Position numbers and translations under genes: made by a program. The notes under the pieces were generated by a model. That model saw only the letters and a program-made list of their open reading frames with translations. It ran no database searches and had not been told where the DNA came from. A DNA stretch of 64,000 nucleotides from Pocillopora damicornis (lineage: Eukaryota): NCBI RefSeq assembly GCF_003704095.1, contig NW_020843379.1:310001-374000 (forward strand), given 5' to 3'. Below, piece after piece: positions 34,379-58,767 of this stretch. How positions within the stretch are numbered: position 1 is the stretch's first letter; every line of letters starts with the position of its first letter.

Positions 34379-37300
34379 ATGGGTGTTAATGGCGGTCCAG
34401 AAGTTTGGAGAAGAGTCAGGGAAGCTTGTACACGAAGAACTTGGCCATGGTCTCGTTCAACTTCCCTTAGGGAAGGAAAAGGAACTGTAATTTTCGCGTC
34501 GAGTCACGAAGATTTGACTTTCGCATACCGTCCAAACTTGAGCGTTAGGGTGAGTTGAGCTTTTCTTCACGTTAGTTGATCGAAGGAGTTTCTTTGTTTC
34601 GGTCTAAAGTTCATGTAAACACTGCCTGCGTTCTAGAGTCCTCGTGACACGATCGATAGAAATGAAACAGTAACTTACGATCACGTACGGTGTTGCTCCA
34701 AGTTGAGTTTTAAATGCTTCGTTTCGAGGTTTTTCTGAGAACTGGATAACGTGTTACCCACGAAATACCATAGTCGTTTTTCTGTTTTGAGAGCCTTCAG
34801 CAAAAATAGTCCCCAATTTCATAGTGAACTCCTATGTTTTAGATTTTCCTCCTGGTGGTGACTCGACTTTGCGGTTTTTAGGTACATTTAGGCGCGTTTT
34901 AAACGATCTTTGCAAGGTTTTTCGAACATTTACATTTAAATTGTTTGATTGATTTTTTAATTTATGAATGGCCGTCTCTTTTGATGAGCTCTCGATCTTT
35001 TACGTTCCAAAACGTTTTGACAGCTAAGAAGTGACCGACAGTATATATATCGTTAAATGCAGACTGTTTAGCCTCTCGATCAATTATGGAATCAGTGCAT
35101 AAACTTATTTAGATTATTCGTGTTTCCAAGGGATAGTAACAGCCATCGGCATTCTACCACGGAAGTCAAACATAACTTAGTGCAACACCTGTTACTTAAA
35201 AAACAATGTGGTTTAGAAACTCATCGCAATTAAATGATTTTGTGTCTTCATTACCTGTTTTGGCAAACTTAATGGTGTTTTTTTTTTGTTAGTTTCATAA
35301 TCTAATACATATTTTGAGCATCAAATATCAAAGGAATTACTTCTGAGATCAACAATTCTCGGAAAATCTTTTGTTTGTGCAATAAAAGTGGTGTCGACAT
35401 CTGTTCCATTATTTAACACCTAACTTAAAAGATGTCACTATTGTCCTATTGATTAGAATCCTATACTCTGATGTGTTTTTTTGTGCACATATATCTGCAG
35501 CAAACTGAAAAGAATGTTAGCCTTCCAAACCTACTATTCTGCTAGACTATATACTGCTTGTTATCACAATCCTTAATCTGTTAACAATCAATTGCTGGAG
35601 GAAATAGCACTTAATGAATTAATGGCTTTGATAGAAAATATACATGGTAATTAGTTCTTAGAAAGATAAATGTTTACAAAGGGGGCATTATTTTAATTCC
35701 TAGAAATGTATTGCTATTTAAAGAGACCTCTAACCAATGGTTTTCCTCTGAGACCAATCAAACTCCTCCTCTGAAAACATACTAATCCTCAAAGGTGACA
35801 CCTGGGTTTTCATGCTTGGCATAACATTCCTAAACCCTGATATCAAAACACAACTTCTCCTCTTTTCACACTCTACTTTTCTTGAAGAAGAATTAGGAGA
35901 AGTTGGTCAATATCAAAAGAACTTATCTTGTGGTCTGTGTGTTTGAGTAATAAGTTAAATTTTAAGGAGAAATCTGCTGTCAATCACATATAGGATTGAA
36001 GAGGTTAGAGGGGATACTTATTAAATGAGCATTGTGGGTTGTCACATGTTCTTCCGAGAAAAACTCTTAGAACTGTGTATTAGGCCAAACAAAAGGCTTC
36101 TTAATAACTGATTTTTTTTAATGGTTTCCGAGAATTTTTTACATACTAACTTCAGACTGGAGGGTACCGGGTGACTGATATTCAATTTCATCATGGGATT
36201 TCAGTTGTATTTATCTCTCCTGCTATTTGTCTGCCTACCAAACAATTTTTTTTTTAATCTGAGTTTTGAAAATCTGGCATTGGATCAACCAGTAATCACC
36301 TAATTGTTATTTTCTTTTATTCACATCACTTGTCTGCTTGATATTGTATCAATATTGTAAGGAGAAAGTCTGTCTTGGTCATTCACTTAAGATACTGGTA
36401 AAGGGAAAGTTACAGAGCTTCAGAGCAGTGCTCATTTGACAGGTCCTAAACAGGAATAAACAATTTTATCCATGCTTATTAGACAAGCAGAGCCTAAGTG
36501 CAGTGGGTTGACTGTTGTAATACGTTTGTTTTCTTTTTCGCACAGGATGTCTGCACAGAAGCAGCCCAGATACTCAAAATCTCCCCAGTTGCATTGGATT
36601 TTTTCACCTTGGTTTCTGTAGACAGCAGACATTTTCTTAATCCAAACAAGGTGCTTAATGAGGCCGAGTGTACCAGCCAGGTTTACTTATTCAGACTGTG
36701 TATCAAAGCCTGCCATGGCCTAGAGCTGAGGGACATTGATAAGAAAGCATTTGAATATTACTTTCATCAGGTGTGTGTTACAATTTTTGCTCATTTTTCC
36801 CACATGTAATAACTGATACATTAATCTTTTTTTTTAATTTTTATTTACTGAATAACTGTAAATTGCTATGAAACAGGGTTATTAATTGTCATTTTTATAC
36901 ATGCCTTATTATAAAAAATGTAATTGGTCAAGAGCATTCAATCGATATACAATAGCACAAGAACTTGACCTGATAAACCAATGTATGCTGTGGACATTGA
37001 GTTATCATGTCAAGTTCAAAGTCTGCCTAGTTTCCAATCCCCTCTTCTGTGTAGTATTCTTTTGATAATTAATGATATCATGCAATTGATGTATGAGCTG
37101 AACTGAGAGGGTGGCTGAATAGTCCATTTTACAGTGGTGTGCTTGGTTGCCAAGCCTTCAAACAGGAATGAGGCTAAGGGTGACCNNNNNNNNNNACAAA
37201 CCTTGCTGCTTTTCAAATGCGAATTACTTTGTTATCATGCTAACTAGATACTGATCTCTATCACNNNNNNNNNNCCTTCAGCCTCACTCCAAATCAAAGG

Positions 37301-57100: not shown

Positions 57101-58767
57101 AAGAACTGTTGTGGTCAGTAGTGACTGACATTCACCAACCCAAGCAGTATTTTTTTCTTTTTCTTTTTTGGACTCTGATGATGACTTCCACTAAGGTTGT
57201 TGAAACATCAGTCACTACTACCAACAACAGCCTTTCTCTGGACTACTCTCGACCAGACACACATTACCTCCAGGTTCAAACTATTTACTGTCAGGTATAA
57301 AGGTTGTCTTATAATAGCTGACAGAGGGAGCAAAAATTGGAGAAACAACTGCTCTTATTTTAACACTTTTGTCATTCAATTGTTAATCCTTTAACTCCTA
57401 AGATCTGATTGTTAATTCTTGCCTCTTGCTGCTACACAACTCCTTATAAATAAGTAATTTAGTGTTAACAACTGAGTTGAAAATGTAAATTGATCACTGT
57501 AAGGAGTTAAAGGCTGATGTTTCAAGCATTAGCCCTAATTGTTGATTGCTCTGACCATAAAACTTCTCCCTGATAAGTTTGAGTATTCTCATTAAGCGTT
57601 CACTAGAAAAACTATGGATACCATAGGGAGAAGTTACATGTTAGTCACTTCTGGGAGATAAAGGGTTAAAAGGTATCTGGGATTGCGTTACATTGGTCTC
57701 TCTTTGCTCCACTTCCTCAGACTGACCCAGAAATTTTGAGCCTTCCTCTCACCCCTTCAGATGCAAAACCAAAATCTTTAAAACTTTGCATCTTTGTCCT
57801 TCACCATGGGAAAACAGTAGGAATCAGACTTTTTTGGTCAAAGAAATTGTCTCAGCTGGTTATTGAAACTAAATTTGTTTATTCTCTAATTGACATGCAC
57901 CTAAAAGTTACTTTTCAGGACCTCTGACTGAAAACCGTGGATAACTGCTTCACAGTTTTGCTTTTCACTTTGGGTTCCAATTTTTTTGCTTGGTAAATTT
58001 AAATTCTCTATTGTACTCTTCATTCCAGGTATGCACTGGAAAGTTTGCTAGAAAAACGATTCACAACAAAAAGTGATGTCTGGAGTTTTGGAGTGACTAT
58101 GTGGGAAATTTTTTCCTTTGGGGAGAAACCATACAAAGATGTTGAAAACTGCAAGGTGAGAGATGAGAAATGTCTTTTACTCCTTTCACTCCCGGATCTT
58201 GTTTGTAAATTTATACTCCTTGCTGTCTGCCATACAATTGTTATGATGCTAAGACTAAGAGCATTCCCTTTTTTTTCACAGAAGTAAACTCACTGCAAGT
58301 TAAAAAGAATCAACAAAAAAATTGATATTTGTGTGACGCCTGAAACTTTGAGAGTTAAAGCCACACAAAAAGTAGAAATGACGGTAGTTGCACCTTATTG
58401 AAATTAATATTTTATGTAATTGAAAATCACTCAGCCTAGCTTGCGAGGTCAAACTCTGTGGCTTAGCCAGCTCTGTAGTCCTTACTTTTTGTTTGCCTCA
58501 ATCCCTGAGTTCCGTACAGCATGCTAAAATGAATCAACCCTTTTTATGTTCTTTCTAAAATAAACTTAATTCTTCTTTTTTGACCCACAGCTCTCTGACT
58601 TTCTAGAAAGTGGAAATCGACTACCTTGTCCACCTAAGTGCCCACCAAAGGTCTACAAAGTCATGCTCAATTGCTGGATAAAACATACTGGAAAAAGACC
58701 AAGCTTTTTCCTCCTGGAAACAACATTTTTTGAAGAATTACAAAAGGATTACCCTCTCAGTGGTTAA
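34379..58767 (+). CDS. JAK: Janus-kinase-like tyrosine kinase: FERM-SH2-pseudokinase-long acidic insert-tyrosine kinase; 30 coding exons, ~1785 aa
   Basis: All GT-AG and phase-consistent: 34379-34549, 36546-36770, 37815-37954, 38778-38970, 39650-39745, 40970-41071, 42036-42135, 42323-42365, 42679-42925, 43323-43371, 44015-44133, 44575-44670, 45132-45289, 46154-46241, 46500-46636, 47241-47391, 48065-48108, 48243-48303, 48600-48651, 49182-49303, 50198-52070, 52978-53157, 53688-53797, 53970-54032, 54511-54655, 55376-55452, 56083-56148, 56855-57000, 58029-58155, 58591-58767 (sum 5358 nt including stop). JAK hallmarks: [49 protein letters not shown]. Confidence 0.88.
38075..38284. mobile_element. 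TTAA-flanked ~200-bp MITE (piggyBac-like termini); representative of a family abundant in the JAK introns
   Basis: ttaaCCCTTTAACTCCC ... GGGAGTTAAAGGGttaa. Related copies near 35830, 38422, 39270, 41108, 42385, 42958, 52117, 54237, 54758, 55899, 57382 and 60405. Confidence 0.75.
39776..40214. mobile_element. Decayed MITE with Tc1/mariner-like ends and subterminal cttaatacagg repeats
   Basis: tacaattcaaacctgtattaagtggtcacc at left; gccacttaataaaggtttggctg and several (g/a)cttaataca(g/a)g units at right. Confidence 0.5.
42323..43371 (+). CDS. JAK: JAK-like gene, SH2 domain exons 8-10
   Basis: HGPITRDRA...[20 protein letters not shown]...VRHFVI...[22 protein letters not shown]. Confidence 0.9.
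44015..48651 (+). CDS. JAK: JAK-like gene, pseudokinase (JH2-like) exons 11-19
   Basis: Kinase fold with LLSGEFGEV (first Gly lost), VVSR for VAVK, HGR for HRD, DFY for DFG, SPQ for APE; [14 protein letters not shown] retained. Confidence 0.88.
44835..45010 (+). repeat. Second Penelope-like short repeat with a hammerhead-like core; related copy at ~57080-57260
   Basis: tgactCTGATGAtgac...ggttgttGAAAtGTCagtca with complementary tgact/agtca flanks, preceded by a partial inverted copy. Confidence 0.6.
50198..52070 (+). CDS. JAK: JAK-like gene, 1873-nt exon encoding an acidic low-complexity insert
   Basis: Lies in the 637-aa ORF; acceptor ttcttctag (phase 0) and donor aaag|gtatac (phase 1) fit the flanking exons; rich in E/D/S/T. 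Confidence 0.85.
52240..52690. mobile_element. ~450-bp TIR element nested inside a TTAA-type MITE
   Basis: atcaatttgaagcttcaacatcc ... ggaatgtcgaagctttaaattgat inverted ends split the host MITE consensus (tcacacatta|agatcatg). Confidence 0.6.
53688..58767 (+). CDS. JAK: JAK-like gene, intact tyrosine kinase (JH1-like) exons 23-30
   Basis: [68 protein letters not shown].....RPSF; TAA at 58765-58767. Confidence 0.95.
54840..54976. mobile_element. 137-bp palindromic MITE with GG...CC ends and 8-bp TSD, nested in a TTAA MITE
   Basis: GGATTAATATCAGTATCTGGGCAACTGCCCACCTACCCCTCCCCTAA ... TTAGGGGAGGGGTAGGTGGGCAGTTGCCCAGATACTGATATTGATCC, with AGAGAATT on both sides. Confidence 0.85.

What the first reader, a model, noticed from the sequence alone, without database searches (positions are those of the whole stretch)
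34379..58767. Complete four-module JAK in an apparently non-bilaterian genome, with ancestral-looking SH2 and kinase
Seen: FERM motifs, a JH2-type pseudokinase ([14 protein letters not shown] cf. JAK HGNVCAKN, KLSDF) and an activation-loop YY. The SH2 keeps a canonical FLLRKS motif and a DGLP.CL tail. The kinase has [11 protein letters not shown] and a generic SFGEKPY segment without the JAK-specific C-lobe insertion/GQM motif that SOCS1/3 bind; these traits resemble Syk/Shark-type kinases. As I recall the literature, the canonical dual-kinase JAK is usually described as bilaterian. Inference: if the host is a coral, this is a pre-bilaterian, intermediate-type JAK, possibly with a functional pTyr-binding SH2.
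Basis: partly seen in the sequence, partly recalled or inferred. Interest (0 to 1): 0.78.

Follow-up and report, generated by a model that had tools for sequence, protein, structure and literature searches.

The report
Coral JAK-like kinase with long insert
A reef coral genome carries one expressed, conserved gene with the full Janus-kinase layout (FERM, SH2, dead kinase, live kinase), split by a ~750-residue acidic spacer; reviews place that layout only in bilaterian animals, so it may be older or have arisen twice.

Summary
On the + strand, 34379-58767, 30 GT-AG exons join into one open frame of 1785 aa: FERM (1-345), SH2 (346-440), pseudokinase (493-757), a 746-aa acidic insert (758-1503) and an intact tyrosine kinase (1504-1785). 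Every N gap lies in an intron and the frame runs across each one.

RNA contigs from four independent coral studies splice the end of the pseudokinase, the insert and the start of the kinase into one mRNA.

The gene is single-copy and under purifying selection (dN/dS 0.20 against another coral). The whole layout, long acidic spacer included, recurs in a more distant species.

- **JAK-specific signal:** only the FERM. Pfam FERM_F1 scores E 2e-8, and a 15-species profile hits nothing in the PDB except JAK1, JAK2 and TYK2.
- **SH2:** canonical, closest to PLC-gamma, Grb7 and Syk/ZAP-70.
- **Both kinase domains:** cannot be assigned to a family exon by exon.

No full-length JAK reference could be fetched, so the domain trees were not built. 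JH2 orthology and the "intermediate JAK" reading stay open.

Verdict: a real JAK-architecture kinase in a coral, a new variant of a known kind. Two first-reader notes on this same window (s1-765091, s1-765168) already flagged the insert.

The parts
34379..58767 (+). Whole coding region of the JAK-architecture gene: 30 exons, 5358 nt, 1785 aa. ATG at 34379 with an in-frame stop just upstream; TAA-type stop ending at 58767.
   Evidence: Gene model with all GT..AG borders and no internal stop. An in-frame stop lies upstream of the ATG.
34379..36770 (+). FERM lobe F1 (aa 1-132): exons 34379-34549 and 36546-36770.
   Evidence: Pfam FERM_F1 PF18379 at E 2e-8, the only such locus in the genome. A 15-sequence profile hits only TYK2, JAK1 and JAK2 FERM chains in the PDB, E 0.007-0.09.
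37815..38970 (+). FERM lobe F2 (aa 133-243): exons 37815-37954 and 38778-38970.
   Evidence: FERM_M E 0.016. Conserved in L001, L005 and L008. dN/dS 0.14-0.25.
39650..42135 (+). FERM lobe F3 (aa 244-343): exons 39650-39745, 40970-41071 and 42036-42135.
   Evidence: Jak1_Phl PF17887 E 0.0023, against FERM_C_FAK1 0.057, on the last exon. Conserved in L001, L005 and L008.
42323..43371 (+). SH2 domain (aa ~346-455): exons 42323-42365 (...LHGPI), 42679-42925 (FLLRKS, VRHF) and 43323-43371 (DGLPVCL).
   Evidence: PF00017 E 1e-11. PDB best matches are PLCG2, Grb7, SYK and ZAP-70. The HGPI exon is also present in L002. dN/dS 0.24.
44015..44133 (+). SH2-to-pseudokinase linker exon (aa 456-495).
   Evidence: Conserved with L001 at 56%; in frame in the model.
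44575..48651 (+). Pseudokinase domain (aa ~496-757): exons 44575-44670, 45132-45289, 46154-46241, 46500-46636, 47241-47391, 48065-48108, 48243-48303 and 48600-48651. SGEFGEV loop; VVSRAL where VAxK is expected; HGRLCAHN where HRDLAARN is expected; DFY where DFG is expected.
   Evidence: PK_Tyr_Ser-Thr hits on its exons. HGRL.AHN or HGWLAAHN is conserved in L002, L004 and L005. The last three junctions are seen in RNA. dN/dS 0.09-0.22.
49182..53797 (+). Insert between the two kinase domains (aa 758-1503; pI 4.2, D+E 20.5%, S+T 20.3%, 12 Tyr): exons 49182-49303, 50198-52070 (1873 nt), 52978-53157 and 53688-53797. The last exon runs into the start of the kinase.
   Evidence: GT..AG joints in RNA contigs of four studies. 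No Pfam family. 120 listed variants of the big ORF are all 637 aa. Composition. Species B has 313-, 199- and 711-aa acidic ORFs at the same place.
53970..58767 (+). Active-type tyrosine kinase domain (aa ~1504-1785): exons 53970-54032 (GQFGEV), 54511-54655 (VAVK), 55376-55452, 56083-56148, 56855-57000 ([16 protein letters not shown]), 58029-58155 and 58591-58767.
   Evidence: PK_Tyr_Ser-Thr hits E 3e-16 to 4e-4. The joint 54032 to 54511 is seen as a loose end in RNA. The orthologue in L007 shares 40-64% identity.
37186..55063 (.). Assembly gaps inside the gene: 37186-37195, 37265-37274, 38161-38170, 38240-38249, 42409-42418, 43063-43072, 54899-54926 and 55050-55063. All are intronic.
   Evidence: Cross-species check of the 37954|38778 junction.

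Best explanation
This is a single, expressed, selectively maintained coral gene for a non-receptor tyrosine kinase built like a Janus kinase. It has a JAK-type FERM domain, an SH2 domain, a catalytically dead kinase-like domain and a C-terminal active tyrosine kinase with a tandem-tyrosine activation loop.

It most likely descends from the same FERM-SH2-kinase ancestor as bilaterian JAKs.

Inferred mechanism, not shown here:
- The FERM-SH2 unit holds the protein on the cytoplasmic tail of a membrane receptor. The SH2 is probably still able to bind phosphotyrosine.
- The pseudokinase restrains the kinase.
- Receptor clustering allows trans-phosphorylation of the YY loop.
- The kinase then phosphorylates docking tyrosines and a STAT. 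SOCS proteins would give feedback.

The ~750-residue acidic, serine- and threonine-rich, probably disordered spacer between the two kinase domains is an obligatory part of the protein in this lineage. It may act as a long tether, a built-in docking scaffold, or both.
For: **Shown**
- A 1785-aa open frame from 30 GT-AG exons.
- RNA joints in four studies link the pseudokinase C-lobe, the insert and the kinase N-lobe.
- The 1873-nt exon cannot be skipped in frame: the intron before it is phase 0 and the one after it is phase 1.
- Pfam FERM_F1 passes its cut-off, and this is the only such locus in the genome.
- F1 profiles hit only JAK-family FERM structures, at the homologous position.
- Jak1_Phl is the best family for the last F3 exon.
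- The SH2 keeps its phosphotyrosine-pocket residues in all orthologues seen.
- The pseudokinase lacks the catalytic Asp, the beta3 Lys and the DFG Gly. HG.L.AHN is conserved in four other contigs.
- The kinase keeps GxGx[17 protein letters not shown] and YY.
- dN/dS is 0.20 over 312 codons against L001.
- The whole layout and the long acidic spacer recur on a 393-kb contig of a more distant species.
- Flanking genes are syntenic in three species.
- One phase-0 intron sits directly before the G of G[EQ]FGEV in both kinase domains.
- A colinear STAT candidate and at least three SH2+SOCS-box ORFs exist in the same genome.
Against: - Neither kinase domain is recognisably JAK-type when searched exon by exon.
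- The catalytic exon of the active kinase ranks MuSK, FGFR, BTK, RET and FAK first, with no JAK in the top 60.
- Its last exon ranks ZAP-70 and Fes first, at 41 bits against TYK2's 37.7.
- The domain is 36-43% identical to Shark/Syk-type kinases.
- The pseudokinase profile matches TYK2 JH2 at only 15 bits, against 55-58 bits for JAK JH1 domains and Lck.
- The SH2 scores below the cut-off of the JAK-type SH2_1 family.
- No JAK has a spacer of this size between JH2 and JH1 (my own knowledge).
- The FERM-to-PDB E-values are weak (0.007-0.9).
- No domain tree was built.
- RNA was laid only on 48200-54190, so the FERM and SH2 exons are joined by inference: frame, splice sites and cross-species colinearity.
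Confidence: 0.6

Rival explanations
1. Convergent, chimeric architecture. An old FERM-SH2-single-kinase gene, the layout reported for the sponge Ephydatia JAK-like protein, lost catalysis in its own kinase. It then captured a second, unrelated Syk/Shark-like or other cytoplasmic tyrosine kinase downstream. The long insert would be the scar of that fusion. On this reading the two-kinase layout is not homologous to JH2-JH1 of bilaterian JAKs.
For: - The insert is very long, poorly conserved and acidic.
- The C-terminal kinase is 43% identical to a Shark-type kinase (P0009: SH2-Ank-SH2-kinase).
- One of its nearest paralogues in the genome is the tandem-SH2 kinase at C1902.
- It lacks a long C-lobe insertion.
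- The proximal dead kinase ranks TYK2 and JAK1 JH1 first, ahead of JH2 by 40 bits.
- The literature describes a FERM-SH2-dual-kinase protein in Monosiga whose kinase groups with Syk (PMC3670263, PMC4342544).
Against: - The bit-score differences among families are 1-4 bits, which is within noise.
- A phase-0 intron sits at the same G-loop position in both domains, which fits an internal duplication.
- The arrangement is old and stable across divergent species.
- Vertebrate JH2 domains are themselves highly derived, so a weak JH2 match is expected under either reading.
Confidence: 0.3
2. Two neighbouring genes (FERM-SH2-pseudokinase, and a kinase with a long N-terminal tail) joined only by read-through or by chimeric assembly of RNA contigs.
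For: - The 5.3-kb gap and the 746-aa non-domain stretch between the domains look like an intergenic region plus a new first exon.
- Contigs, not raw reads, were laid.
Against: - Six GT..AG joints are identical in four runs from four studies, at contig depths of 27-186.
- Single contigs span 48600-51815 (X5) and 50196-54032 and beyond (X1).
- The frame stays open through all junctions.
- Neither the exon-by-exon reading nor the RNA joints showed a terminal or an alternative first exon in between.
- The same order, without an intervening stop-bounded gene end, occurs in species B.
Confidence: 0.04
3. The scaffold is not coral DNA. On this reading it is a bilaterian contaminant, and the gene is an ordinary invertebrate JAK.
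For: JAKs are ordinary in bilaterians, and the taxon is not named by any tool.
Against:
- PolyA RNA runs labelled coral or marine metagenome, from several studies, hold about half of the words. That share fits the exons.
- More than 200 near-identical copies of the big ORF occur in ENA and Logan assemblies.
- The same three-gene neighbourhood is found on 0.4- and 2.3-Mb contigs of related species.
- The SH2 and the insert are unlike those of known bilaterian JAKs.
Confidence: 0.02

Closest known systems
Bilaterian Janus kinases (Drosophila Hopscotch; vertebrate JAK1, JAK2, JAK3, TYK2)
   Same: - Same domain order: FERM, SH2, pseudokinase, kinase.
- Domain sizes are near those I recall for JAK2: FERM about 345 aa, SH2 about 95 aa, each kinase-like domain about 270-280 aa.
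- JAK-type F1 lobe (Pfam FERM_F1; the PDB profile hits only JAK1, JAK2 and TYK2).
- The F3 lobe is best matched by Jak1_Phl.
- The SH2 opens with HGPI.
- The pseudokinase has HG in place of HRD.
- The activation loop has YY.

The comparison of HGPI, HG..C..N, YLPKNK, QICKGM and RLPCPP with JAK sequences rests on my memory and was not tested.
   Different: - The SH2 is canonical in sequence: pocket Arg, Arg and His plus a DGL tail. It fails the JAK-type SH2_1 cut-off.
- The pseudokinase also lacks the beta3 Lys (it has Arg there), and it resembles JAK JH2 only weakly (15 bits).
- The kinase has no long insertion between SFGEKPY and RLPCPP, so no place for the GQM motif.
- A 746-aa acidic spacer separates the two kinase domains.
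Sponge JAK-like protein (Ephydatia fluviatilis BAA81718, as described in PMC3670263)
   Same: A non-bilaterian protein with FERM and SH2 followed by a tyrosine kinase, regarded in that review as the first JAK-like protein.
   Different: It is described as having a single kinase domain and no pseudokinase. The coral gene has both. The sponge sequence could not be fetched, so nothing was compared here.
Monosiga brevicollis UTK05mod (Suga et al. 2012, as cited in PMC3670263 and PMC4342544)
   Same: FERM, SH2 and two kinase domains. Its kinase is reported to group with Syk rather than JAK, which echoes the Syk/Shark-like look of the coral C-terminal kinase.
   Different: It is a choanoflagellate protein, and the authors regard its architecture as possibly coincidental. 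No sequence was available for comparison here.
Syk/ZAP-70 and Shark/HTK16 kinases
   Same: - Apart from orthologous exon fragments and multi-SH2 proteins, they are the nearest kinase-bearing relatives of the SH2 in the 1.8-billion-protein library (P0009, P0011).
- They are among the nearest in the PDB (SYK, ZAP-70).
- The C-terminal kinase is 36-43% identical to them.
- They also have YY in the activation loop and a CPP.CP motif (the latter from memory).
   Different: They have tandem SH2 domains (plus ankyrin repeats in Shark), no FERM and no pseudokinase. The coral genome has its own tandem-SH2 kinase elsewhere (C1902).
Focal adhesion kinase (FAK/PYK2)
   Same: FERM followed by a tyrosine kinase. 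FERM_C_FAK1 is the second-best family for the F3 exon (E 0.057). FAK and PYK2 rank high for several kinase exons.
   Different: FAK has no SH2, no pseudokinase and a C-terminal FAT domain. The F1 profile does not hit FAK FERM structures.

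Membership tests
Janus kinase (JAK) family | N-terminal FERM domain of the JAK type (F1, F2, F3) | tested here: met
   - FERM_F1 PF18379 E 2e-8, 34.5 bits against a cut-off of 26.1.
- It is the only such locus in the genome.
- The 15-sequence F1 profile hits only TYK2 (E 0.0066), JAK1 (0.023) and JAK2 (0.09) in the PDB.
- FERM_M E 0.016 and Jak1_Phl E 0.0023 are below their cut-offs on single exons.
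Janus kinase (JAK) family | SH2(-like) domain directly after the FERM | tested here: met
   PF00017 E 1e-11 at aa 346-440, directly after F3. The JAK-specific SH2_1 model scores 25.5 bits, under its cut-off of 27, so the domain is present but not of the derived JAK subtype.
Janus kinase (JAK) family | Pseudokinase (JH2) between the SH2 and the kinase, lacking the catalytic Asp | tested here: met
   A kinase fold by Pfam on its exons. HGRLCAHN replaces [14 protein letters not shown] replaces VAxK, and DFY replaces DFG. These changes are conserved in L002, L004 and L005.
Janus kinase (JAK) family | Pseudokinase orthologous to JH2 (groups with JH2 in a tree) | tested here: inconclusive
   The profile of alphaE to DFG scores 15.3 bits on TYK2 JH2. 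It scores 55-58 bits on TYK2 and JAK1 JH1 and on Lck. No tree could be built.
Janus kinase (JAK) family | C-terminal active tyrosine kinase (JH1) with tandem tyrosines in the activation loop | tested here: met
   [21 protein letters not shown] and EEYYK. YSYYK in species B.
Janus kinase (JAK) family | JH1 groups with JAK kinases and carries the JAK-specific C-lobe insertion | tested here: not met
   - Only about 16 residues separate PY from RLP in both species.
- JAKs are not among the 60 best PDB chains for the catalytic exon.
- JAKs rank below ZAP-70 and Fes for the last exon.
- That the insertion defines JAKs rests on my own knowledge. GQM itself is absent from JAK3, so it is not family-wide.
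Janus kinase (JAK) family | JH2 and JH1 adjacent, joined by a short linker | tested here: not met
   A 746-aa insert, constitutive in RNA.
Janus kinase (JAK) family | Constitutive binding to Box1/Box2 cytokine-receptor tails and phosphorylation of STAT | not testable with these tools
   Only the presence of a STAT candidate (C1014) and of SOCS-type ORFs in the genome was seen. Receptors were not searched for.
Syk/ZAP-70/Shark family | Two SH2 domains N-terminal to the kinase; no FERM, no pseudokinase | tested here: not met
   The protein has one SH2, preceded by a FERM and followed by a pseudokinase.
FAK/PYK2 family | FERM, then kinase, then a FAT domain, with no SH2 | tested here: not met
   An SH2 and a pseudokinase are present. 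No Pfam family was found on the five insert and C-terminal exons scanned, and the C-terminal tail after the kinase is short. The F1 profile does not hit FAK.

The most novel reading that the evidence does not exclude
The dual-kinase JAK architecture was already present in the common ancestor of cnidarians and bilaterians. The anthozoan protein would keep its early state: a phosphotyrosine-binding SH2, a pseudokinase still close to an active JAK-type kinase, and a Syk-like kinase without the SOCS-binding insertion. In cnidarians the long acidic, tyrosine-bearing spacer would serve as a built-in docking tail, so that the kinase could recruit STAT without a classical cytokine receptor.
Probability: 0.25. 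Interest if true: 0.8.

Novelty: new variant of a known kind. Interest (0 to 1): 0.56.

Why it matters
Reviews of JAK-STAT evolution state that STAT, SOCS and SHP predate Bilateria, and that the canonical JAK with its pseudokinase, together with cytokine receptors, appeared only in Bilateria (PMC3670263, PMC6797617). Later surveys are vague or contradictory about cnidarians (PMC6307210, PMC13203501).

A conserved, expressed FERM-SH2-pseudokinase-kinase gene in corals has one of two meanings. Either it moves the origin of the regulatory pseudokinase back to the cnidarian-bilaterian ancestor, or it is a second, independent invention of the same layout. Domain trees and biochemistry can decide between these.

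The gene also offers three natural variants for testing how JAK autoinhibition and receptor coupling depend on these parts:
- a canonical SH2
- a kinase without the SOCS-binding loop
- a 750-residue tether between pseudokinase and kinase

For coral biology, it is a candidate upstream kinase for STAT signalling.

Tried and rejected
1. **Full-length relatives.**
   - The whole-library search with the SH2 exon returned only exon-sized ORFs, multi-SH2 proteins and Shark-type kinases.
   - The word search with the 640-aa ORF returned 120 near-identical 637-aa genomic ORFs. Spliced products longer than 1120 aa fall outside its length window.
   - No JAK, Syk, FAK or ACK reference set could therefore be obtained, and the planned FERM, SH2, JH2 and JH1 trees were not built.
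   - The joined 1785-aa model was used only inside local scripts and was not sent to any search, fold or complex tool.

2. **Exon-by-exon PDB ranking of the kinase domains**. The families differ by only a few bits, so it does not decide.

3. **ESM Atlas**. It gave only generic FERM/RA and generic kinase clusters.

4. **Pfam FERM_F2 and Jak1_Phl whole-genome scans**. They found nothing, most likely because the exons are short. The control genomes did not ring either, so this is not evidence of absence.

5. **N-myristoylation.** MG starts the protein in the window and in species B, but species C starts MV. Rejected as a conserved feature.

6. **STAT3-type YxxQ docking motifs in the insert.** None of the 12 tyrosines fits. 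One S-x-Y-x-x-L (SMYISL) exists, but this is weak.

7. **Sequence conservation of the insert between the window and species B.**
   - The bulk is not conserved: local score 61 against 54 +/- 8.5 for shuffles.
   - Only its first exon shows a modest motif (IL..PD..E.W...LELQA): score 38 against 23.6 +/- 4.5, with a shuffle maximum of 43.

8. **Rfam on the high-depth intron repeat**. Nothing was found.

9. **Two-gene and contaminant readings.** Rejected; see the rival explanations.

Full report
**What is there**

The window is G000:C14:310001-374000 of a 234.35-Mb assembly in 4393 contigs.

Exon-level Pfam scans gave:
- FERM_F1 (PF18379): E 2e-8, above its cut-off
- SH2 (PF00017): E 1e-11
- JAK-type SH2_1: 25.5 bits, below its cut-off of 27
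- PK_Tyr_Ser-Thr on five exons of two separate kinase-like domains
- FERM_M at 0.016 on an F2 exon
- Jak1_Phl at 0.0023 on the last F3 exon, ahead of FERM_C_FAK1 at 0.057

**Gene model and the N gaps**

I enumerated GT/AG pairs that keep the frame and checked them against orthologous contigs and RNA joints. The result is 30 exons, all GT..AG, 5358 nt and 1785 aa with no stop.

The protein divides as follows:

| Part | Residues |
|---|---|
| FERM | 1-345 |
| SH2 | 346-440 |
| Linker | 441-492 |
| Pseudokinase | 493-757 |
| Insert | 758-1503 |
| Kinase | 1504-1785 |

All six flagged N gaps, and two unflagged ones (54899-54926, 55050-55063), lie in introns, and the frame is kept across each. For the junction 37954|38778, which spans two gaps, a gap-free orthologous contig (L001) has the same donor and acceptor and no extra conserved exon. 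Nothing was filled in.

The SH2 begins in a 43-nt exon (42323-42365...AAILHGPI) that joins at 42679. An equivalent CHGPIS exon lies upstream of the SH2 exon in L002.

**One gene, not two**

About half of the sampled words of 48100-54000 are held by polyA and random-primed RNA runs from several studies labelled coral or marine metagenome. Contigs of four such runs, from four studies, were laid on 48200-54190.

They show identical GT..AG joints at these exon ends and starts:
- 48303|48600
- 48651|49182
- 49303|50198
- 52070|52978
- 53157|53688
- 53797|53970

One loose end runs from 54032 into the exon at 54511 ([10 protein letters not shown]). Another runs from 48241 back into the exon that ends at 48108.

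Single contigs span 48600 to 51815, and 50196 to beyond 54032. So the C-lobe of the pseudokinase, the whole insert and the N-lobe of the kinase sit on one spliced mRNA.

The 1873-nt exon is bounded by a phase-0 and a phase-1 intron, so it cannot be skipped in frame. The insert is therefore constitutive.

In one run the big exon carries length variants of +99 and -6 nt, both in frame. All 120 listed database variants of the big ORF are 637 aa long.

Their linkage rests on frame, splice sites and cross-species colinearity.

**Conservation**

- L001, another coral (SH2 71% identical), shares the F2, F3, SH2, linker and pseudokinase exons. dN/dS is 0.20 over 312 codons, and 0.09-0.22 in the pseudokinase exons.
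- L002 and L004 carry an SH2 followed by a pseudokinase with HGRLNAHN and HGWLAAHN.
- L005 and L007 are two views of one 393-kb contig that holds the entire layout:
  - an MGVN start, with F1 57% identical
  - F2, F3 and SH2
  - a pseudokinase with HGRLSAHN
  - open frames of 313, 199 and 711 aa; the two composition-checked (199 and 711 aa) are acidic (pI 4.8 and 4.3)
  - a kinase with [16 protein letters not shown] and GNRLPQPGGCP
- The F1 exon has 15 exon-sized relatives at 63-99% identity in ENA and Logan assemblies, 9 of them with a precomputed FERM_F1 hit.
- A TSP1-repeat gene and an intronless glycosyltransferase lie upstream in the window and in L008. The TSP1-repeat gene also lies upstream in L005.

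The long spacer is conserved as a feature but not in sequence. Only its first exon shows a modest shared motif.

**What family**

The FERM is the one clearly JAK-specific part. FERM_F1 matches only this locus in the genome. Profiles of the F1 exon from 2 and from 15 sequences hit nothing in the PDB at E up to 1 except JAK1, JAK2, mouse JAK1 and TYK2 FERM domains, all at the homologous position. The best E is 0.0066.

The SH2 is canonical:
- It keeps the Arg of ITR, the Arg of FLLR and the His of VRHF. Both Arg residues and the His are kept in every orthologous SH2 exon that covers them.
- It ends in a DGL tail.
- Its best solved relatives are PLC-gamma-2, Grb7/10/14, SYK and ZAP-70. No JAK passes E 0.01.
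- In the 1.8-billion-protein library, its nearest non-orthologous relatives are multi-SH2 proteins and SH2-Ank-SH2-kinase (Shark-type) proteins.

The pseudokinase has lost three catalytic features: the catalytic Asp (HGR for HRD), the beta3 Lys (VVSRAL) and the DFG glycine. A four-species profile of its alphaE-to-DFG stretch scores as follows:

| PDB target | Bits |
|---|---|
| TYK2 JH1 | 57.7 |
| Lck | 56.5 |
| JAK1 JH1 | 55 |
| TYK2 JH2 | 15.3 |

The C-terminal kinase is intact. Its exons rank ZAP-70, Fes, Src and FAK, or MuSK, FGFR, BTK and FAK, a few bits above or without JAKs. It is 36-43% identical to Shark/Syk-type kinases and 28% identical to its own pseudokinase. It runs from [14 protein letters not shown] directly into [12 protein letters not shown], so it has no long C-lobe insertion.

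Several short motifs look JAK-like to me: YLPKNK, QICKGM, RLPCPP and HG..C..N. That is recall, not a test.

One phase-0 intron lies directly before G[EQ]FGEV in both kinase domains. This fits an internal duplication but does not prove one.

**Pathway context**

The genome holds a colinear STAT candidate on C1014: a STAT_alpha exon, two STAT_bind exons and an SH2 exon within 5.3 kb on one strand. Each is weak on its own. It also holds at least three open frames with an SH2 followed by a SOCS box. Receptors were not searched for.

**Taxon**

No tool names the organism. The assembly size matches the 234 Mb published for Pocillopora damicornis (PMC6208414). The RNA runs that hold the locus are labelled coral or marine metagenome. 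Orthologues lie on large contigs of related host genomes. A bilaterian contaminant is very unlikely.

**Literature**

[quoted passage not shown] It describes a sponge FERM-SH2-single-kinase protein and a Monosiga FERM-SH2-dual-kinase protein whose kinase groups with Syk.
- PMC6797617 repeats that JAK and cytokine receptors were added in Bilateria.
- PMC6307210 lists JAK "fragments" in Acropora, Nematostella and Orbicella.
- PMC13203501 (2026) says both that JAK was and that it was not detected in coelenterates.

I found no paper that describes the four-domain cnidarian protein, its canonical SH2 or its insert. The library is limited to open-access papers, and I could not see public gene annotations, which may well already label this gene JAK-like.

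**Limits**

The word search only sees proteins of 0.55-1.75 times the query length, and no stop-free reference longer than 640 aa exists here. Full-length JAKs and full-length cnidarian orthologues could therefore not be fetched. The domain trees that would settle JH2 and JH1 orthology were not built.

The joined model was analysed only in local scripts. It was not sent to any search, fold or complex tool.

**Verdict**

The gene is a real, expressed, conserved JAK-architecture kinase of a coral.

Its FERM places it in the JAK lineage. Its SH2 and kinase look unspecialised. Its pseudokinase is dead but not demonstrably JH2. The 746-aa acidic spacer is a lineage feature without a known counterpart.

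I rate it a new variant of a known kind, of moderate to good interest.

Noticed in passing
window 52600-52799 (intron 52071-52977): RNA contig depth is 5,000-31,000 in all four runs, with many loose ends at 52715-52765. This is a multi-copy, highly expressed repeat. It has no Rfam match.
   Followed up: partly
window 22156-22971 (-) and 24449-25981 (-); L008:183-3242; L005:299-1126: A TSP1-repeat gene and an intronless GT1/GT4-type glycosyltransferase lie upstream of the JAK-like gene. The glycosyltransferase is 78% identical in aa to the one in L008. The same neighbours occur in L008, and the TSP1 gene also in L005. The glycosyltransferase that another note flags as an HGT candidate is therefore an old, syntenic resident of these genomes. 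Its orientation differs between the window and L008.
   Followed up: partly
G000:C1014:61622-66857 (-): A colinear STAT candidate: a STAT_alpha exon (E 0.58), two STAT_bind exons (0.03 and 0.08) and an SH2 exon (5e-5). Each is weak alone, but they stand in the right order on one strand.
   Followed up: partly
G000:C2282:995115-995561; C4385:114530-115000; C436:24036-24392: Three open frames each carry an SH2 followed by a SOCS box. They are SOCS-type genes.
   Followed up: no
G000:C1902:15463-23527 (+): A tandem-SH2 tyrosine kinase of the Syk/Shark type. Its catalytic exon is among the nearest paralogues of the JH1 catalytic exon (68% over 37 aa).
   Followed up: no
window 51008-51012 and 51716: In RNA run X10 the big exon carries a net +99-nt replacement and a 6-nt deletion. 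Both are in frame, so the insert shows length polymorphism.
   Followed up: no
window 54899-54926 and 55050-55063: Two further N gaps lie inside the finding's span but were not listed by the scan's program. Both are in the intron between kinase exons 54511-54655 and 55376-55452.
   Followed up: yes
L004 (Logan SRR26493834, 4.4 kb): A more distant relative, 35% identical in the SH2. It has alphaE and the catalytic loop of the pseudokinase in one exon (HGWLAAHN), so its intron pattern differs. Its taxon is unknown.
   Followed up: no
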